The notes below the pieces were generated by a model. It searched no databases. It saw nothing but the letters and a program-made list of their open reading frames with translations, and was not told where the DNA came from. This document shows positions 3,248 through 13,981 of a DNA stretch of 64,000 nucleotides, piece by piece. The first letter of the stretch is position 1. Each line of letters begins with the position of its first letter. The position numbers were made by a program, and so were the translations under genes. The stretch spans positions 62,001 to 126,000 of IMG/VR virus record IMGVR_UViG_3300046005_000547. The stretch is one strand, 5' to 3'.

Positions 3248-3610
3248 ATGAACACATTTGAACAATTCAAACAGACGGTGATGGAAGAATTTGCTGGTCG
3301 ATTGAATGAAGAAAAACAAACAAAATTGGTAGTCAAAAAGATTAGTCCTAAATGGTATAGAATCGTTATTGACACAGATAAATGGGATATACCAGAAACC
3401 GTTGTTGATATCCTACAGACTGAACATAAAGAATGGTCTGTATGCTATGGTGAGAAAATGTCATATTCAGTTGGTGAACAATCGCATGATACTCGTAGAT
3501 GGGTATTTGTTAAGTTAAACAATGCCAAAGTTTATGCGTTAGATCTAGCTGCTGCCATTAAAAATGATAAACCTTATCCTTCTATCTTAGACGACAAATA
3601 CGAACTTTAA
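3248..3610 (+). CDS. Internal head protein-like (capsid-targeting leader family, member 1)
   Basis: N-terminus MNTFEQFKQTVMEEFAGRLNE resembles the T4 IP leaders MKTFKEF/MKTYQEF and ends in a gp21-type LxE site; TATAAATT at 3225; terminator downstream. Confidence 0.65.
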   Translation: MNTFEQFKQTVMEEFAGRLNEEKQTKLVVKKISPKWYRIVIDTDKWDIPETVVDILQTEHKEWSVCYGEKMSYSVGEQSHDTRRWVFVKLNNAKVYALDLAAAIKNDKPYPSILDDKYEL

Positions 3611-3616
3611 TTTAAT

Positions 3617-3649
3617 ATCCTGTGAGATGATATGTCTTACGGGATTTTT
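3617..3649 (+). terminator. Rho-independent terminator (ATCC...GGAT-T tract family)
   Basis: atcctgtgaga...tcttacgggat followed by a T-run. Confidence 0.75.
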
Positions 3650-3708: not shown

Positions 3709-5457
3709 ATGACTATTATCAAAGTGAGAAAACTAGACGAAGCGTTTCTATACGTTACGTCAGAATTTGGAATTGAACAAGAAATGTATGAATACTTTTC
3801 ATTCATGTCACCTGGAGCAAAGTTCGATCCAAGAGTGAGGAATCGTCTATGGGATGGTAAAATTAGATTGTATTCTCAATCTAATAAAAAGATTCATGTA
3901 GGATTATTTTCTTACATAGAGAAATTTGCCAGAATAAATGATTATCAAATACAATTAGAAAATGAAATTATTGAACAAGTTGATGTAACATATTCTGATA
4001 TTGAAAGATTTGTTAACAGTTTGAATATACATTCTCGTGGCGTAAAACTTGATGTCAGAGATTATCAGCTTTCTGCTATATATGAATCAATTAAAAACAA
4101 ACGTATAATCTGCGTCTCTCCCACGTCTTGTTTAGACCCAAATACCGAAATTGAAGTTTTATTTGATAATACAAAAAAATCAATAACATTATTAGAACTC
4201 GATTCCCTAGTTAAAAATGGAGTAAATCCAAAAATTAACACCCCTTCTGGTTATGAAAAAATAACAGAAACATATAGAAAATTTGGGAATGGTATAGAAA
4301 TTCACTTCGAAGATAATTCAACACCAATAAAGGCAGCAAATAATCATTTAATGTATTTAAACGATAATTGGATAGATTCAATTGATGTTAAAATAGGAGA
4401 CGATTTTGGTAATAAAAAAGTTACCAAAATCAATAAATTGGAACCACAAGAATGGATAGATTTTTCGATAGATGCAGACCATGAATCATATTTCCATAAT
4501 GATATATTACATCACAATTCTGGAAAATCTGTGATAATATATGCGATTATACGATGGTATATTGAACACAATTTAAAATGTTTAATCATTGTCCCGAGTA
4601 CAATGTTAGTTGACCAGATGTTTGGTGATTTTAAAGATTATTCTTCCCATAATGGTTGGAATGTAGATAAACATTGTAATAAGATTTATTCTGGTCATAA
4701 ATGTCATCTTGATTTAGATTGCGCTATTTCTACATGGCAAACTTTACAGAACATAAAACATCAATTACAATTCTTTGAAAATTTGGATGTTTTAATAGGC
4801 GACGAATCACATCTATACAAAGCTGCTGTTGTAACAAAATTACTAAACAATATGCCAAACACTTCCATCAGAATAGGAACGACTGGTACATTAGATGGAA
4901 AACAAATCTCCGAATTACAATTAACGGGTTTATTTGGTAAAGTGTACAAGGTCATTACGACCAAAGAACTAATGGATGAGAATAGTGTTACTACATTAGA
5001 CATTTCATGTATCCTGTTGAATTATGATTCAGATACAAAGAAGTTATTGACCAAAACCGAATATCAGAAGGAAATTGATTGGTTGGTCCAAAATGATAAA
5101 CGTAACAAATTTATTGTTAATCTAGCTGCGTCTCAACAAGAAACAACTTTGGTGTTATTTCAATATGTTGAGAAACATGGATTACCTCTATACAAAATGT
5201 TAAAGGAAAAATGCCCCGACAGAGAGATTCATTATATTTCAGGATCTGTAGATAATTCCAAACGAGATGAAATTAGGAATTCAATGAATACATCATCTCG
5301 AATGATTAAGATATGGTTCGGTGAATTATACATATCTGTTGGCGAAAACGAAAATGTGTTATTGAGTAACGGTGATTTAATACAATCAAAATATATCAAC
5401 GAGAATCATGATATAGATAACAATTGGATTAAATCAAGAAAATTAAACAAACTATGA
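3709..5457 (+). CDS. uvsW: UvsW-like SF2 DNA/RNA helicase with mini-intein; C-terminal helicase motifs absent
   Basis: WDGKIRLY, RDYQ, Walker A SPTS|SGKS split by the intein, DESH, GTTGT, LVLFQYVEKHG; the ORF ends without motifs V/VI. Confidence 0.85.
   Translation: MTIIKVRKLDEAFLYVTSEFGIEQEMYEYFSFMSPGAKFDPRVRNRLWDGKIRLYSQSNKKIHVGLFSYIEKFARINDYQIQLENEIIEQVDVTYSDIERFVNSLNIHSRGVKLDVRDYQLSAIYESIKNKRIICVSPTSCLDPNTEIEVLFDNTKKSITLLELDSLVKNGVNPKINTPSGYEKITETYRKFGNGIEIHFEDNSTPIKAANNHLMYLNDNWIDSIDVKIGDDFGNKKVTKINKLEPQEWIDFSIDADHESYFHNDILHHNSGKSVIIYAIIRWYIEHNLKCLIIVPSTMLVDQMFGDFKDYSSHNGWNVDKHCNKIYSGHKCHLDLDCAISTWQTLQNIKHQLQFFENLDVLIGDESHLYKAAVVTKLLNNMPNTSIRIGTTGTLDGKQISELQLTGLFGKVYKVITTKELMDENSVTTLDISCILLNYDSDTKKLLTKTEYQKEIDWLVQNDKRNKFIVNLAASQQETTLVLFQYVEKHGLPLYKMLKEKCPDREIHYISGSVDNSKRDEIRNSMNTSSRMIKIWFGELYISVGENENVLLSNGDLIQSKYINENHDIDNNWIKSRKLNKL
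4129..4518 (+). mobile_element. Mini-intein (130 aa) in the UvsW Walker A motif
   Basis: Begins CLDPNTEI, block B AANNH, ends ILHHN followed by Ser; removal restores SPTSSGKS. Confidence 0.9.
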
Positions 5458-5470
5458 AAGGAAAACTAAA

Positions 5471-5752
5471 ATGAGTGCATTCGAACAATTTAAACAAACG
5501 GTGATGGAAGAATTTGCTGGTCGTATAGACGAAAGTAAAATCATGTTTGCTGTGACTGTTGATGGTGATAAGGTTGACGTGAAATCTAAAGATAAAGATT
5601 TCAAAGTTGACGTAAAGGATGTTGAAAATGAAAAAGAAGTTATCGATACGGTCGTTAAATTCTTAGAAAAACAAGGTTATAAAAATGTGAATGGACATCC
5701 AAATACATCTGAAAAAGGTGGAGTCGTTGGTGTCATCCACGTAGAGAAATAA
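5471..5752 (+). CDS. Internal head protein-like (leader family, member 2)
   Basis: MSAFEQFKQTVMEEFAGRIDE is nearly identical in DNA and protein to the 3248 leader, followed by an unrelated body. Confidence 0.65.
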   Translation: MSAFEQFKQTVMEEFAGRIDESKIMFAVTVDGDKVDVKSKDKDFKVDVKDVENEKEVIDTVVKFLEKQGYKNVNGHPNTSEKGGVVGVIHVEK

Positions 5753-5758
5753 ATTAGA

Positions 5759-5790
5759 ATCCCATCCGCTGAAAAGTTGATGGGATTTTT
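5759..5790 (+). terminator. Rho-independent terminator, identical to the one at 10496
   Basis: atcccatccgctgaaaagttgatgggattttt. Confidence 0.8.
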
Positions 5791-5863
5791 ATTGGATAAA
5801 ATTTTTATATCTTAAGATGAAATTCAAAGTATAATAAACATTCATTTTATACAGGAGAAATAT

Positions 5864-6237: not shown

Positions 6238-8538
6238 ATGATTGAACATTTAAAAACAATTGAACAACAATATCAAGTATTAACTGAATTAGAACATATC
6301 AGAAAACGTGTTGGTATGTATGCAGGTAGTCCTGTATTAGAAGAACATGAAGAATTCATCTATTCTATCCAAAACAATAAAATGGAATTACAAACCATTT
6401 CTTATATTCCAGCATTGATTAAGATTATCTCGGAAGGAATTGACAACGTAGTTGATGAACATAACAGAAATCCAAAAAAGATTAACGAATTGAAATTATC
6501 AATTAAAGATAATGAAATCATTATTTCTGATAATGGCGGTATTCCTGTACAAATTCATGCAGATTTCGGTAAATATGTTCCTGAAATTATATTTGGTACA
6601 TTACGTTCTGGTTCTAATTATTCAGATGATGATGCTCAATCCCTGATAGGAACAAATGGATTAGGAGCGAAATTAATTTCTGTTCTAAGTGAATACTTTA
6701 TTGTTGAGACATCTGATGGTTCTAATTATTTCCATCAAGAATATAAAAATGGAATGTCAGAACGTTCTGAACCCGTTATCACTAAATCAAAGAAACATTT
6801 TACAACATTAACATTTAAACCAGATTTAGAATATTTTGGTTTGGAATCATTTGATGAACATCATACATTAAAAATCATTAGACGATTGGTTGATGTTGCC
6901 GCCAATAATCCTTTATTGAAGGTGTATTTCAATGATGAAAAATTCAATGTATCTGCGTTCGATGATTACATTTCATTATATTCAGAAAGTTATGTATATG
7001 ATTCAACTGATGATTGGAAAATTGGTTTGTCTGCGTCTTCTGGTTTCAATCAGACCAGTTTTGTTAATAGTGTAGAAACGTATATGGGTGGAACTCATGT
7101 TAATTACGTTGTAAATCAGATTACAGAGAAACTCAGAGCTTACGTCAAAAAGAAACATAAGATTGATATTAAACCATCTGATATCAAAAGTCATTTACAT
7201 GTATTTGTTTCATGTAAAATCAATCGACCAAAGTTTTCCAGTCAGACCAAAGAAAACATGATTAGCACTATAACAGATTTTGGTTCATCATGGTCTTGTT
7301 CAGATAAATTCATCAATAAGATTATTACATTGGAAGTTGTACAATCAATTTTGGATTGGGCGGAAGCAAAGGAAAATGCTCTAAAGAATGCAGAATTACG
7401 CAAATTGAATAAATCTGTTGACAAATTGAATCCGGCAAGAGTGGACAAGTTTGAAGACGCTAATGAGAAGAAAGATAGAAGTAAGTGTACAATTTTCCTT
7501 ACAGAGGGTAACTCGGCAATGGGGGCGATAATGTCTGCCAGAGACCCTGAATTACATGGAGCTTTTGCGCTTAAAGGTAAACCATTAAATGTGACGGATA
7601 TTGATGCCAAAAAGTTAATGGAAAATAATGAATTCAAAAGTATTCTAACAATCATGGGGTTGAAACTGGGTGAACAAGTCACACCAATGACTCCATTACG
7701 TTTTGGTAAAATCTGTTTTCTAACGGATGCGGATTGTATTACAGAAGAACATTATGTGTTGACAGAATCTGGCGAAAAACTTATCTCAGATGTTAATCCG
7801 TTAGAAGATAAAGTGTTGACGCATTTGAATCAATATGCAGTAGTGGAATATGTTAACATTAAATCAACAGATGTTGTAATCAGAATCACTTCTGGTAATG
7901 ATATTGTTGAAGGTACACCTGAACATAAACATGTAATCTTTAGAGATGGTTGGGATCTTCCAAAAAAATATATGTTGAAAGAAATTCTACCAACGGATAT
8001 GATAATCAAATATATTGATGGACAACAAATCAATCATCCCATTGATTCTATTGAAACTATCGAAAAAACTATAACAACATATGATTTAACAGTTAAAGGT
8101 CATCATACATTTTATGTTAGACATAAAGATTCTGAAAATTATATCTTAACGCATAATTGTGATGGTTCTCATATCATTGGTCTGTTAATTAACATGTTTC
8201 ATTCATTCTGGCCTGAATTGTTTGAATTAGGATATATCTACAGATTCAGAACCCCATTGATTAAAGTCAATGTTGGTAAAGACGTATTAGAATTCTATGA
8301 TGAAAAAGAGTTTGATGAATGGAAATCCAAGAACACAAAAAAGTTCACATCAAAATACTTCAAAGGATTAGGTACATCCACGGCAAAGGATTTCAAAGGA
8401 TACCTAGCTAATTCCGATAAGAATATGGTACAATATACAATTGATGACATTAAAGATTCAGATTCAATTAAATTGGCATTCTCCAAGAATTCAGATTCAG
8501 CTGATTTACGCAAACAATGGTTAAACATCGAAGGTTAA
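6238..8538 (+). CDS. Type II DNA topoisomerase large subunit (gp39+gp60 fused, GyrB/ParE-like) with mini-intein
   Basis: EHIRKRVGMYAGS, GHKL motifs EGIDN / DNGG / GTNGLGAK, TEGNSA, LKGKPLN, Toprim TDAD|CDGSHI, KYFKGLGTS. Confidence 0.92.
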   Translation: MIEHLKTIEQQYQVLTELEHIRKRVGMYAGSPVLEEHEEFIYSIQNNKMELQTISYIPALIKIISEGIDNVVDEHNRNPKKINELKLSIKDNEIIISDNGGIPVQIHADFGKYVPEIIFGTLRSGSNYSDDDAQSLIGTNGLGAKLISVLSEYFIVETSDGSNYFHQEYKNGMSERSEPVITKSKKHFTTLTFKPDLEYFGLESFDEHHTLKIIRRLVDVAANNPLLKVYFNDEKFNVSAFDDYISLYSESYVYDSTDDWKIGLSASSGFNQTSFVNSVETYMGGTHVNYVVNQITEKLRAYVKKKHKIDIKPSDIKSHLHVFVSCKINRPKFSSQTKENMISTITDFGSSWSCSDKFINKIITLEVVQSILDWAEAKENALKNAELRKLNKSVDKLNPARVDKFEDANEKKDRSKCTIFLTEGNSAMGAIMSARDPELHGAFALKGKPLNVTDIDAKKLMENNEFKSILTIMGLKLGEQVTPMTPLRFGKICFLTDADCITEEHYVLTESGEKLISDVNPLEDKVLTHLNQYAVVEYVNIKSTDVVIRITSGNDIVEGTPEHKHVIFRDGWDLPKKYMLKEILPTDMIIKYIDGQQINHPIDSIETIEKTITTYDLTVKGHHTFYVRHKDSENYILTHNCDGSHIIGLLINMFHSFWPELFELGYIYRFRTPLIKVNVGKDVLEFYDEKEFDEWKSKNTKKFTSKYFKGLGTSTAKDFKGYLANSDKNMVQYTIDDIKDSDSIKLAFSKNSDSADLRKQWLNIEG
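7735..8157 (+). mobile_element. Mini-intein (141 aa) in the topoisomerase Toprim DxDxD motif
   Basis: Begins CITEEH, block B GTPEH, block F TYDLTV, ends LTHN followed by Cys. Confidence 0.9.
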
Positions 8539-10471: not shown

Positions 10472-10495
10472 TAAAAACAATCGTATTGTTTTAGA

Positions 10496-10870
10496 ATCCC
10501 ATCCGCTGAAAAGTTGATGGGATTTTTATTGCGTAAAATATACATTCTAAATGATTCTTAAAACATCCATTATTTGTCCGTTAATCCATCTTAATGATAT
10601 ATGTCAATCAACTCTACAGGACTATTTGAATCCATCTTAAAACAACAAATAATTGGACAGGATTTAATGTTAACATCGAATCAATAAATTCACTGTATCG
10701 AGAACATCTTAAAGATTCATTATCGCTATTCTAGACATCGAGTTTGTAAATATCAACATAATAATACTTCTTGACTTTTCCAGCAAATTCCATTATAGTA
10801 GACTATGTCGACGTTTCAGTTAGTGTATATTACTACTTGATTATTCTTTTATATTACTACAAGATTCTTT
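10496..10870 (+). repeat. Dispersed ~470-bp family unit 1 (terminator, conserved boxes, promoter, start motif)
   Basis: catccattatttgtcc, caatcaactctacagg, aatccatcttaaa, TTGACT-N17-TATAGT, agactatgtcgacgtttcagtta and tatattactacaaga are shared with the 41.9-44.1 kb array. Confidence 0.9.
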
Positions 10871-10941
10871 TCGATTTATCTTTCTTTTTATAATTTTTAA
10901 CATATAATTTTAATCTTTAAACAAACAATGAGGGATTTACA

Positions 10942-12001: not shown

Positions 12002-13981
12002 TTAGAAATGATATACTTCCACTTTATCTTCATCCAAACCGTCATTAATATATCCTACAGGTAACATTTGTTGGTCGATATAATCCATCTGTTGATTATA
12101 CAATTCCTTTCTAATGTCGACATCTCCCATATCCTTGATAAACGACGTTGAACATAACCAAGCAAATATAACACAACACATCACTAGATCGTCATGATTA
12201 GGTGGATCCGCAGAGTAACTACCTTGTCTTTCGATAAACACAGAAAACTCCTGTATAATATCAGGATCGAATATCAACAACTTAGATTCCTCAATCAACG
12301 ACTTCAATGTCATACATCCAATTCGTTTAATCTTCTTATCCATATTCAATCCCACTTCCATTGTTCCTGAAAATGATTCACATGGTATCTGTCCCTTTGG
12401 TGTCTTCTTAATGGAAATCAAATTCTCGTATTCCAAATCATCCTGAAGTATCTGTGCCACCTCCTTCGAACAATTTATCTCCACCAAAATGAATGCCTCG
12501 TTATACTCCATACCTATTTTATACAGGATATTTGGATATAACATAGGGCTAATCTTATTATCTCTATACTTACCTACAATCTTATACGGGAAATTCGTCA
12601 CATCGAAAATAACGGCTGATGAATAATCCCCACCAACACCCTTCGATGTATCCGCCGATATAATATACTGATGCCCTTCAATAGGTGCTTCCTGTATATC
12701 TAATCCATCTCTTGAATAAATGTATGGAATCGGTGACATCGATGAAATAGATGATGAATTTATAAGTGTGGCAGATGAACCTAAGAATTCACATAACACC
12801 TCTTGATTGAATTTAATCTCACCTAATATCTTTAACTGTTCATCTGCCCAAGTTGGATCTCGTTCTGGATGTTCGCTCCAATGTACAGTGAATGGTACAA
12901 ATCCGTTAGTTCCTTGTTGAGCATCATTCCAATATTTCCAAAAATGATTGTATCCTAACGGAGTTGACGTCAATACAACTTTTGTTTCTTTACCAGAGGA
13001 AATAGTAGGATACACAGAAGCGAAGAATGCGTCGGCGACGGCATTAGGAATAATTGCCGCTTCGTCCACGTATAAGAAATTACAATTATGTGAAATTACT
13101 CCATTAGAATAATAACAATGGACATCTTCAACAGTGTCTATATCGTAAACAGTTTCTGGTGTAATCTCAACAATAGATGAAATGATTTTATCCGATAGAA
13201 TATCATTTACATTTAAATCTTCGCATCTAATCCATTCTCCATTTATTTTAAATCTATGATCCAGTGTTGAATTGATATGAATGTCATCTGTAAATTTTAA
13301 TTGTAATAATCGTTCCGGCGTTCCTTGATTCAAAACTCCTTTAAAAGATTTGAAACCATAAGGAGTTTTGATTTTGAACGATTCTTTATATGAATTGTAT
13401 AATTCCTCTATAGAAATATCAAAAACATAATCCCCGTCCAAAATGGTAACAATGGTTTCTCCTGTTACACAAGACTTACCCCTGATTCCAGATGCAGAAG
13501 TTGCGGCAGTGAATATCTTAGAACCATTTTCTAAATGCATATCACCTTTGTTCAAGGATAGTACACCGTGTTGTAACCATTTCGGTAAAGATTCATACAT
13601 TAATTGTATACGACTTAGTACCTCTCTAGCAGCCGCGGCTTTATTTGCTAAAATGGCGGTAGTCTTATGGTTATTGAATAATGTGTAATGTAATATGTAT
13701 GCTGAAGTTACCGTAGTTTTTCCGAGCTGGCGCCCAATTAATGCTAAAACCTTGCGTTCACTGTGGAGTAAGCGAACATAATCCTTTTGAAACGGATACA
13801 TTTCAAAATTCACTAATCCCCTATCCAATGAAACAACTTTACAGTATGTAACAATAAAATAACAAGGATCTTGTTTGCATTTAATGTATTCTTCTATTTG
13901 TTCTTGAGTGAAATCAACTTTATATCCAGTTGGTTTTAAATTTTCATTACCATTATAACCAAGTAATTTATTATCTGCCAT
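12002..13981 (-). CDS. Terminase large subunit (gp17) with mini-intein
   Basis: YNGNENLK, EYIKCKQDP, Walker A GRQLGKTT, RGKS|CNFLYVDE Walker B, STPLG, FNQEVLCEFLGS, HDDLVM nuclease motif. Confidence 0.95.
   Translation of the reverse strand: MADNKLLGYNGNENLKPTGYKVDFTQEQIEEYIKCKQDPCYFIVTYCKVVSLDRGLVNFEMYPFQKDYVRLLHSERKVLALIGRQLGKTTVTSAYILHYTLFNNHKTTAILANKAAAAREVLSRIQLMYESLPKWLQHGVLSLNKGDMHLENGSKIFTAATSASGIRGKSCVTGETIVTILDGDYVFDISIEELYNSYKESFKIKTPYGFKSFKGVLNQGTPERLLQLKFTDDIHINSTLDHRFKINGEWIRCEDLNVNDILSDKIISSIVEITPETVYDIDTVEDVHCYYSNGVISHNCNFLYVDEAAIIPNAVADAFFASVYPTISSGKETKVVLTSTPLGYNHFWKYWNDAQQGTNGFVPFTVHWSEHPERDPTWADEQLKILGEIKFNQEVLCEFLGSSATLINSSSISSMSPIPYIYSRDGLDIQEAPIEGHQYIISADTSKGVGGDYSSAVIFDVTNFPYKIVGKYRDNKISPMLYPNILYKIGMEYNEAFILVEINCSKEVAQILQDDLEYENLISIKKTPKGQIPCESFSGTMEVGLNMDKKIKRIGCMTLKSLIEESKLLIFDPDIIQEFSVFIERQGSYSADPPNHDDLVMCCVIFAWLCSTSFIKDMGDVDIRKELYNQQMDYIDQQMLPVGYINDGLDEDKVEVYHF
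13085..13471 (-). mobile_element. Mini-intein (129 aa) in terminase, just before Walker B
   Basis: Begins CVTGET, block B STLDH, block F VYDI, ends ISHN followed by Cys. Confidence 0.9.

What the first reader, a model, noticed from the sequence alone, without database searches (positions are those of the whole stretch)
5270..5457. UvsW lacks helicase motifs V/VI and ends in a HINT-like fragment: possible split gene
Seen: after ...SKRDEIRNSM the expected IIVASYG.FSTG...QSIGR segment is missing. In its place is MIKIWFGELYISVGENENVLLSNGDLIQSKYINENHDI and a stop, followed by an IP-like cassette. The tail loosely resembles the block-B region of the three inteins in this window (e.g. LLQLKFTDDIHINSTLDHRFKINGEWIRCEDLNVNDI) but has no catalytic His or Cys1. 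I did not find the missing half in the window. Inference: a split helicase completed in trans by a gene elsewhere, using an intein-derived docking fragment, or a truncated remnant.
Basis: partly seen in the sequence, partly recalled or inferred. Interest (0 to 1): 0.6.

Follow-up and report, generated by a model that had tools for sequence, protein, structure and literature searches.

The report
Two-gene UvsW helicase with intein-like tail
This lake phage encodes its UvsW repair helicase as two genes 84 kb apart, and the larger piece ends in a small dead intein-like domain; the same arrangement occurs in many phages and seems to have been spread by a homing-endonuclease cassette that splits the gene but probably leaves it working.

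Summary
ORF 3709-5457 is a UvsW helicase that stops after motif IV and ends in a ~51-residue non-helicase tail (5302-5454). Three independent assemblies and contigs from three runs show the same junction.

The missing half exists outside the window, at G000:C1:151671-151988 on the minus strand. It is a 105-aa gene with its own ribosome-binding site and carries motifs V and VI.

The split is conserved and widespread. The tail profile finds 90 protein clusters, nearly always at the very C-terminus; the 32 full-length ones checked are all UvsW-type. At least 14 stand-alone C-halves start with MKP/MKA, mostly MKPTK. In relatives the halves are adjacent, often with an HNH homing endonuclease between them. 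The same layout occurs in cultured Dickeya Limestonevirus and Vibrio phages.

The tail folds alone at pLDDT 95. In three structure libraries it matches almost only inteins, in the block-B half of the N-intein. It lacks residue-1, block-B and C-terminal catalytic residues, so protein splicing is not expected.

A complex model supports binding of the two halves (ipSAE 0.71; best control 0.00), with tail and head in the interface.

Verdict: a two-subunit UvsW made by a mobile gene-splitting cassette with an inactive HINT-derived module. The docking role is inferred.

The parts
3709..5457 (+). uvsW-N: the large piece of a two-gene UvsW helicase. It holds the N-terminal domain, RecA1 with motifs I-III, the first half of RecA2 with motif IV, and a tail. 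The precursor is 582 aa.
   Evidence: Pfam UvsW_N, ResIII and DEAD, with no Helicase_C. tblastn to UvsW of marine T4-like phages covers residues 1-523. Aligned in A1. The partner gene lies outside the window at G000:C1:151671-151988 (-), which is L002 1348-1665 (-).
4129..4518 (+). 130-residue mini-intein inside the Walker A motif (..SPTS | C...HHN | SGKS..). It is presumably removed by ordinary cis protein splicing.
   Evidence: It is an exact 130-aa insertion relative to the intein-less N-half of the related phage G001 and to intact UvsW. Weak PT-HINT hit. It aligns with the other inteins of the genome.
5302..5454 (+). HINT-like tail (M532-L582): a small beta-rich domain equivalent to the block-B half of an N-intein, without catalytic residues. 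It is conserved at the C-terminus of all split UvsW-N proteins.
   Evidence: Alignments A3 and A7. The profile finds 90 clusters, with the tail at the very C-terminus in all but three repeat proteins. AF2 pLDDT 94.8. Fold hits are almost only inteins. hhalign to local inteins aligns columns 50-92. pN/pS is 0.23, with changes mostly at third codon positions. Tail residues 531-538, 563-569 and others lie in the predicted interface with the C-half.
3617..3645 (+). Terminator-like hairpin followed by a T run, ending the upstream gene just before uvsW-N.
   Evidence: Consensus scan only.
5471..5752 (+). Small gene directly downstream of uvsW-N. Its first ~18 codons are repeated at window 3248-3610 and directly upstream of the C-half gene. 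This is context, and possibly a recombination substrate.
   Evidence: The motif occurs only three times in the genome. DNA alignment A4.
3248..3610 (+). Second copy of the small-gene family with the shared 5' repeat, directly upstream of uvsW-N.

Best explanation
UvsW of this phage is made from two separately encoded polypeptides. UvsW-N (window 3709-5457) carries the N-terminal domain, RecA1, the first beta-alpha-beta-alpha of RecA2 (motif IV) and a ~51-residue tail. Its Walker-A mini-intein is presumably removed by normal protein splicing. UvsW-C is 105 aa, lies 84 kb away on the other strand, and carries a short conserved head (MKPTKVE..), the rest of RecA2 (motifs V and VI) and the C-terminal helices. 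The two chains are proposed to assemble non-covalently and rebuild the RecA2 domain, giving an active two-subunit helicase. The split was created by a mobile cassette made of tail, HNH homing endonuclease gene and head, which sits at exactly this site in related phages. In this lineage the endonuclease gene is gone and the C-half gene has moved to another early-gene cluster. The tail is a catalytically dead half of a HINT (intein) fold. It cannot splice. The most likely role is to hold or cap the interface with the C-half and its head. Shown: the split, the partner gene, conservation, selection, the link to the cassette and the HINT-like predicted fold. Inferred: assembly, helicase activity, the docking role, and descent from a real intein.
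For: Partner gene: a Helicase_C hit in a 119-aa frame at C1:151824-151955. The ORF carries the motif V and VI sequences. Its real start is MKPTK, behind an AAGGA ribosome-binding site. The N-half aligns to residues 1-523 of intact UvsW and the C-half from residue ~18 onward, leaving a 3-codon gap in phage Melnitz. Conservation: phage G001 (249 kb) has an N-half with the same tail and a C-half ~68 kb away on the opposite strand. pN/pS is 0.11-0.23 for body, tail and C-half. Family: 90 clusters carry the tail, at the extreme C-terminus in all but three repeat proteins. Of 32 full-length members, all have ResIII, 27 have UvsW_N and none has Helicase_C. 14 stand-alone C-halves start MKP/MKA, mostly MKP(T/S)K. 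Cassette: the halves are adjacent in canonical UvsY-UvsW-gp55-gp47 synteny in L019 and L023. An HNH endonuclease sits between them in L022, L025, L027 and Dickeya phage PP35. A near-identical intact allele has 38 nt where the split allele has a 935-nt cassette. On the tree the split state changes at least 3 and most parsimoniously 8 times. Tail fold: pLDDT 94.8. About 29 of 32 chains with Z>=2 are inteins or Hint domains; the best are PI-PfuI at Z 5.0 and Npu DnaE-N residues 52-99 at Z 4.9, rmsd 2.3 A over 46 residues. The Foldseek top hit is the VidaL intein. Five of ten ESM Atlas rows carry Intein_splicing, and the rest are gyrase-, RNR-, PolB- or HNH_3-type clusters of the kind inteins invade. 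hhalign gives the same register, P 0.009. Binding: ipSAE 0.71 in three runs against a best control of 0.00. That mark was reached by 58 of 80 solved complexes and 2 of 110 mismatched pairs. Runs agree in >=86% of contacts and partner pLDDT is >=73. The interface includes head residues 1-21 and tail residues 531-538 and 563-569.
Against: No experiment shows assembly or helicase activity. The complex model may simply reproduce the intact UvsW fold from memory, and my own alignments were used, so its calibration holds only roughly. Structural Z scores for the tail are modest (5.0 or less) because the domain is small. Sequence support for HINT homology is weak: no Pfam HINT hit in 58 tails and hhalign probability 4.5%. 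Only half a HINT fold is present, and no intermediate with a complete split intein at this site was found. The coordinates of the complex model could not be inspected, so tail-head contacts are not resolved.
Confidence: 0.75

Rival explanations
1. The two halves assemble purely by complementation of the RecA2 domain. The HINT-like tail does something else, for example binding DNA or another recombination protein, mediating dimerisation, or serving the endonuclease cassette.
For: The lowest-error contacts in the complex model are RecA2 strand-strand pairs, not tail contacts. A half-HINT could pair with itself because the HINT fold is pseudo-symmetric; this is an inference. The tail folds confidently on its own.
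Against: The tail is kept under purifying selection in lineages that lost the endonuclease. About 22 tail residues, including the two most conserved motifs, lie in the predicted interface with the C-half. The tail and the MKPTK head occur together in every locus where both could be seen.
Confidence: 0.17
2. The gene is interrupted by a self-splicing group I intron with a homing endonuclease, as was proposed for uvsW of Dickeya phage LIMEstone1 (PMC3296691). The tail would then be read-through into intron RNA.
For: A homing endonuclease gene lies between the halves in several relatives. The published LIMEstone1 annotation calls it a putative intron.
Against: Here the halves are 84 kb apart on opposite strands. 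There are no Rfam hits at E<=1 in the window region or L002, apart from chance sRNA-level rows. There is no intron family at E<=10 in L019. Six split loci, including PP35 and D506, give no hit of any family. In Vibrio phage D506 the N stop and the C start overlap, and in L023 the gap is 35 nt. The tail is a conserved protein domain: differences fall mainly at third codon positions (28 against 11 and 10) and pLDDT is 95.
Confidence: 0.02
3. Tail and head form an active, unusually divided split intein that ligates the two halves by protein trans-splicing.
For: HINT-like fold of the tail. The layout resembles the fractured genes with split inteins described in PMC2677866.
Against: No column at or before the tail holds a conserved Cys, Ser or Thr that could serve as residue 1. 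The block-B Thr..His positions are variable. The head is about 12 residues, with no His-Asn plus nucleophile before the helicase sequence. Only about half of a HINT fold is present.
Confidence: 0.02
4. The ORF is a decaying remnant or pseudogene, and the phage has no working UvsW.
For: The ORF lacks motifs V and VI, and the canonical neighbourhood is disrupted.
Against: pN/pS is 0.11 for the body, 0.23 for the tail and 0.14 for the C-half between two phages with saturated synonymous change. Tail length and stop position are identical in the relative. The architecture is conserved in 90 clusters and in cultured lytic phages.
Confidence: 0.03
5. The junction is an assembly artefact.
For: None found.
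Against: Independent records and contigs agree.
Confidence: 0.01

Closest known systems
Fractured genes: split inteins with a free-standing homing endonuclease between the gene halves (Dassa et al. 2009, PMC2677866)
   Same: A phage DNA-metabolism enzyme is encoded as two ORFs. The upstream ORF ends in HINT-fold sequence, and in relatives a free-standing endonuclease gene sits between the halves. The cassette is polymorphic among close relatives.
   Different: In fractured genes the N- and C-intein fragments are complete and catalytically competent, and the halves are ligated. Here only about 50 residues of HINT fold remain, all catalytic positions are missing, the C-side piece is about 12 residues, and the halves must stay non-covalent. 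UvsW is not among the eight host enzymes listed there.
Genes in pieces made by free-standing homing endonucleases in T4-like phages: nrdA/mobE of Aeh1, genes 39/60 with mobA of T4, split gene 43 of phages 25 and 44RR (review PMC2988022)
   Same: An endonuclease-associated insertion splits a conserved enzyme gene into two polypeptides that reassemble non-covalently. Activity was shown for Aeh1 NrdA and the split polymerase.
   Different: In those cases the review mentions no added, conserved fold at the break, and the two genes stay adjacent. Here a conserved HINT-like domain and a conserved head travel with the break, and in this phage the pieces are 84 kb apart on opposite strands.
uvsW of Dickeya phage LIMEstone1, annotated as interrupted by a putative intron with endonuclease I-LimI (PMC3296691)
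   Same: It is the same family. Limestonevirus PP35 has UvsW-N with the same tail, then an endonuclease gene, then UvsW-C starting MKPTK.
   Different: The paper treats it as an intron without RNA evidence. No intron model matches, and the tail is a protein domain. The HINT likeness and the two-subunit reading are not in that paper.
Phage T4 UvsW (single-chain SF2 helicase)
   Same: Same domain order and motifs I-VI when the two pieces are taken together. It lies a few kb downstream of uvsY.
   Different: T4 UvsW is one polypeptide with no intein and no HINT-like insertion.
Naturally split inteins with short fragments (VidaL, AceL) and canonical Npu DnaE
   Same: These are among the best structural matches of the tail. 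In split inteins, fragment association is the first step.
   Different: They splice. The tail family has no catalytic residues and covers only the block-B half.

Membership tests
UvsW-type SF2 helicase | N-terminal UvsW_N domain | tested here: met
   PF21241, E 1.1e-14, residues 4-83.
UvsW-type SF2 helicase | RecA1 with motifs I-III (Walker A, DExH, TGT) | tested here: met
   ResIII and DEAD hits. The motifs align with intact UvsW. Walker A is interrupted by a mini-intein, so it is complete only after splicing, which is inferred.
UvsW-type SF2 helicase | RecA2 with motifs IV, V and VI in one polypeptide | tested here: not met
   Motif IV is in the window ORF. Motifs V and VI are in a separate 105-aa gene at C1:151671-151988.
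UvsW-type SF2 helicase | ATP-dependent branch migration or R-loop unwinding | not testable with these tools
   Needs biochemistry.
Split intein / fractured gene | Host gene in two ORFs, with HINT-fold sequence at the end of the first | tested here: met
Split intein / fractured gene | Nucleophile (Cys or Ser) at intein residue 1, and block-B Thr..His | tested here: not met
   These columns are variable in the 58-member alignment A7 and in the hhalign register.
Split intein / fractured gene | C-intein with blocks F and G, a terminal Asn and a +1 nucleophile | tested here: not met
   The head is about 12 residues (MKPTKVE...) and runs straight into helicase strand sequence.
Split intein / fractured gene | Free-standing homing endonuclease between the halves | tested here: inconclusive
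   Present in relatives L022, L025, L027 and PP35 (phrog_655, E 5e-49). Absent at both halves in this genome.
Homing-endonuclease 'genes in pieces' | Presence/absence polymorphism of the insertion among close relatives, with conserved flanks | tested here: met
   L030 against L022: flanks are 83-86% identical, and 38 nt in one stand against 935 nt in the other. At least 3 state changes on the tree.
Homing-endonuclease 'genes in pieces' | The two polypeptides reassemble into an active enzyme | tested here: inconclusive
   The complex model gives ipSAE 0.71 against 0.00 for controls. There is no experiment.
Group I intron with endonuclease | Structured intron RNA between contiguous exons | tested here: not met
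   No intron model matches in the eight loci scanned. The halves are on opposite strands 84 kb apart.

The most novel reading that the evidence does not exclude
The tail and the MKPTK head are the two parts of a minimal, catalytically dead split-HINT heterodimerisation module carried by a homing-endonuclease cassette. On this reading the element invades the conserved core of an essential helicase gene and repairs the damage at the protein level by non-covalent docking. [quoted passage not shown] Once the module is in place the two halves can be encoded anywhere in the genome, as they are here.
Probability: 0.35. Interest if true: 0.85.

Novelty: new variant of a known kind. Interest (0 to 1): 0.68.

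Why it matters
Phage genes split by homing endonucleases are known, and the 2010 review calls the question of how the pieces find each other an open structure-function problem (PMC2988022). Here a conserved, foldable, intein-like module travels with the break. It occurs in at least 90 protein clusters and in cultured Dickeya and Vibrio phages, so the question can be tested directly: keep or remove about 50 residues and about 12 residues, then ask whether the helicase still assembles. If the module docks, it would show inteins being reused as non-covalent assembly domains. It would also explain how an endonuclease cassette can sit inside a RecA-like domain, and it would offer a very small natural heterodimerisation pair. 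The result also corrects an annotation habit. Truncated UvsW genes and small "superfamily II helicase" ORFs in metagenomic T4-like phages are two halves of one enzyme. The LIMEstone1 "putative intron" in uvsW is more likely this cassette.

Tried and rejected
1. One large inversion between the repeated small-gene 5' ends as the cause of the separation. Rejected: gp55 and gp47 lie between the halves and keep the + orientation, and G001 has the separation without those genes next to its N-half.

2. The tail as a decayed copy of the motif V/VI region, as a MAFFT alignment suggested. Rejected by the shuffle test and by hhalign.

3. Family scans of the tail. Pfam and PHROGs gave nothing. A PDB sequence profile gave nothing. 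The word-based protein search found only the query itself.

4. A true split intein or a longer N-intein at this site. Longer C-halves (about 129-156 aa) and longer N-halves (500-516 aa) proved to be 5'-truncated or internally started pieces of intact uvsW genes, proteins with inteins at Walker A, or proteins with other insertions. No intermediate was found. That is not evidence that none exists.

5. Intron search with Rfam in eight loci. No intron family matched.

6. Promoter and terminator consensus scans. Counts were at chance level and uninformative, apart from one hairpin upstream of uvsW-N.

7. A second tail-like domain elsewhere in the genome as a possible partner. None was found.

8. 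The repeat finder on a minus-strand reference returned an input error. It was replaced by a DNA alignment.
Full report
**What is in the window**

The window is positions 62001-126000 of a 234,735-bp virus record with direct terminal repeats. It is AT-rich (31% G+C) and T4-like. Contigs of several lake-water metagenome runs hold the sequence.

ORF 3709-5457 (+) encodes 582 residues. Pfam finds UvsW_N, ResIII and DEAD but no Helicase_C. Against intact UvsW proteins of marine and freshwater T4-like phages it aligns from residue 1 to about 523-531.

There is an exact 130-residue insertion inside Walker A. This is a mini-intein with Cys at its start and His-Asn followed by Ser at its end (window 4129-4518). 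It is absent from the orthologue of a related phage.

After motif IV the helicase sequence stops. About 51 residues of other sequence follow (window 5302-5454), then a stop codon.

**The junction is real**

- A second IMG/VR record is 99.99% identical over 12.9 kb across the junction.
- A third phage, G001 (249 kb), has an orthologue at 77% identity with the same tail and the same stop position.
- Logan contigs of three runs bridge the junction without a difference. Two of those runs may be the source sample. The third is independent.

**The missing half**

A search of the whole record with the Helicase_C model found a weak hit in a 119-residue open frame at C1:151824-151955 on the minus strand. 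It matches the C-terminal ~100 residues of UvsW in thousands of phage records at up to 57% identity.

In phage Melnitz the matches of the two pieces lie only 9 nt apart, so together they cover a whole UvsW.

The true start is the second Met (MKPTK...), which follows an AAGGA ribosome-binding site. Gene callers and relatives use this start as well. The gene is therefore C1:151671-151988 (-), 105 aa. It lies 84 kb from the N-half, on the other strand and outside the window.

**The split is old, selected and widespread**

G001 has the same arrangement, with the halves about 68 kb apart on opposite strands. Between the two phages synonymous sites are near saturation, but pN/pS stays low:

| Region | pN/pS |
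|---|---|
| Helicase body | 0.11 |
| Tail | 0.23 |
| C-half | 0.14 |

Tail differences fall mainly at third codon positions (28, against 11 and 10 at positions 1 and 2).

A length-restricted protein search with the C-half found 14 stand-alone proteins of 105-108 aa that begin MKP/MKA, mostly MKP(T/S)K.

A profile of seven tails, searched against 1.84 billion representative proteins, found 90 clusters at E<=0.001. The tail sits at the very C-terminus in all but three repeat proteins. Of 32 full-length members, all have ResIII, 27 have UvsW_N and none has Helicase_C.

The same tail and the same MKPTK head occur in cultured phages:

- **Dickeya Limestonevirus** (for example PP35): two "putative UvsW" CDS flank a homing endonuclease.
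- **A group of Vibrio phages** (D506): the two helicase ORFs overlap by ATGA.

**How the split arose**

In relatives with intact UvsW the order is gp3, UvsY, UvsW, a small gene, gp55, gp47. Split relatives keep that place and show a series of states:

| Locus | Arrangement |
|---|---|
| L023 | N-half, 35-nt gap, C-half |
| L019 | N-half, 244-nt gap with a near-consensus promoter, C-half |
| L022, L025, L027, PP35 | N-half, HNH homing endonuclease gene, C-half (overlapping the endonuclease gene's end in L022, L025 and PP35) |

The intervening protein matches phrog_655, "homing endonuclease", at E 5e-49.

An intact allele (L030) and a split allele (L022) are 83-86% identical in DNA on both flanks. 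They differ by 38 nt in one against a 935-nt cassette in the other, made of tail, endonuclease gene and head.

On a tree of the C-terminal 94 columns (14 split and 77 intact sequences), the split state needs 8 changes. Well-supported branches force at least 3. That is the pattern of a mobile endonuclease cassette, not of a single ancient accident.

In the clade that holds this phage (seven C-halves, SH-aLRT 94) the C-half gene sits in another early-gene cluster with RNase H, endonuclease V and dCMP deaminase. No endonuclease gene lies next to either half.

A single inversion does not explain the move, because gp55 and gp47 lie between the halves in the original orientation.

**What the tail is**

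Sequence methods say little:

- No Pfam or PHROG family matches.
- No HINT family matches in any of 58 tails.
- There is no likeness to the motif V/VI region.

Structure prediction says more. With a 58-sequence alignment the tail alone folds at mean pLDDT 94.8 (pTM 0.72) into four strands, a short helix and a final strand.

- **Exhaustive PDB search.** Alignment to 48,161 representative PDB chains gave 32 chains with Z>=2, and about 29 of them are inteins or Hint domains. The best are PI-PfuI at Z 5.0 and Npu DnaE N-fragment residues 52-99 at Z 4.9 (rmsd 2.3 A over 46 residues). VidaL, MchDnaB-1, gp41-1, NrdJ-1 and hedgehog Hint follow.
- **Foldseek.** The top hit is the VidaL intein, and 7 of the first 18 rows are HINT proteins. 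E-values are not significant for so small a domain.
- **ESM Atlas.** Ten rows reach TM 0.63-0.70 by the query. Five carry Intein_splicing. The others are gyrase-, RNR-, PolB- or HNH_3-type clusters, the kinds of protein that inteins invade.
- **hhalign.** A profile comparison with five inteins from this data set aligns tail columns 5-47 to intein columns 50-92. That is the block-B region and the same register as the structural match (P 0.009, probability only 4.5%).

The tail is therefore half of a HINT fold. It ends where canonical N-inteins end and where endonuclease domains are inserted; that last point is from general knowledge of inteins.

The catalytic positions are not conserved. There is no nucleophile at any candidate residue 1 and no Thr..His in block B. 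The head has no His-Asn plus nucleophile. Protein splicing is not expected.

**Do the halves bind?**

I asked for a complex of N-half residues 273-582 with the 105-aa C-half, using family alignments and controls. The result was ipSAE 0.70, 0.71 and 0.72 against a best control of 0.00. That mark was reached by 58 of 80 solved complexes and 2 of 110 mismatched pairs.

The runs agree in at least 86% of contacts, and partner pLDDT is at least 73.

The lowest-error contacts pair the first RecA2 strands of the N-half with strands of the C-half, which is a rebuilt RecA2 sheet. The interface also lists C-half residues 1-21 (head and first strand) and tail residues 531-538, 541, 546, 553, 561, 563-569, 571 and 574.

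The tool warns that such a pass may reflect memory of the intact fold, and that my own alignments weaken its calibration. This is support, not proof.

**Rivals**

- **Intron.** This was published as a "putative intron" for LIMEstone1 uvsW. It fails here. The halves are on opposite strands. No intron model matches in eight loci. The N stop and the C start overlap in D506. The tail behaves as coding sequence.
- **Active split intein.** It fails on all catalytic features.
- **Pseudogene.** It fails on selection and conservation.
- **Another role for the tail.** Assembly by RecA2 complementation alone, with the tail doing something else, remains open.

**Comparison with known systems**

The system works like the endonuclease-made "genes in pieces" of T4-like phages (nrdA/mobE, 39/60/mobA, split gene 43). 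It looks like the "fractured genes" with split inteins. It differs from the former by carrying a conserved HINT-like module. It differs from the latter by lacking splicing chemistry and most of the intein. It differs from both in that the pieces here are dispersed.

I found no paper describing the tail, its HINT likeness or a two-subunit UvsW. The library searched is incomplete.

I rate this a new variant of a known kind.

Noticed in passing
window 3248-3610 and 5471-5752; G000:C1:152044-152208 (-); also L017 9303-9953, L029 545-706, L005 5813-5900: A family of small genes shares a ~55-nt 5' repeat coding M-x-x-F-E-(Q/K)-F-K-Q-x-V-M-E-E-F, followed by different, often highly charged, sequences. 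The genome has only three copies: two flank uvsW-N and one directly precedes uvsW-C. Relatives have tandem copies upstream of their C-half. Whether these repeats played a part in moving the C-half is unknown.
   Followed up: partly
window 4129-4518: The mini-intein in the Walker A motif of UvsW-N is present in this phage and its near-identical twin record but absent from the 77%-identical orthologue in G001. Other tail-bearing UvsW-N proteins (P0141, P0187 and the L027 fragment) also carry inteins at or near this motif.
   Followed up: partly
window 7735-8157 (+), window 13085-13471 (-), G000:C1:47823-49235 (+): There are further inteins in the gp39-type topoisomerase, the large terminase and, outside the window, the portal protein. 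The portal intein is 471 residues and holds an HNH-like endonuclease region.
   Followed up: partly
window about 10490-10895 (G000 72490-72895): A stretch of ~350-400 nt has about 25 diverged copies (67-77% identity) scattered over the genome, for example near 42-44 kb, 104-106 kb, 140-142 kb, 162-163 kb and 229-230 kb. This is a multi-copy gene or repeat family of unknown nature.
   Followed up: no
window 5754-5802 and 10491-10539: A 49-nt hairpin-containing repeat (96% identical) lies downstream of the small gene after uvsW-N. Logan contigs of all runs break there.
   Followed up: no
proteins P0112, P0099, P0120, P0103: P0112 is a C-half with a different, 44-residue head at the same split site. 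Several 145-153-aa proteins start at the beginning of RecA2. P0120 at least is explained: it begins 22 nt from the end of an 848-nt contig that I otherwise treat as an intact allele. The others may be similar artefacts or a second kind of UvsW split.
   Followed up: no
L022 386-970: A GIY-YIG endonuclease gene lies directly upstream of a split uvsW-N that also has the HNH gene inside the split, so two different homing endonucleases sit at one locus.
   Followed up: no
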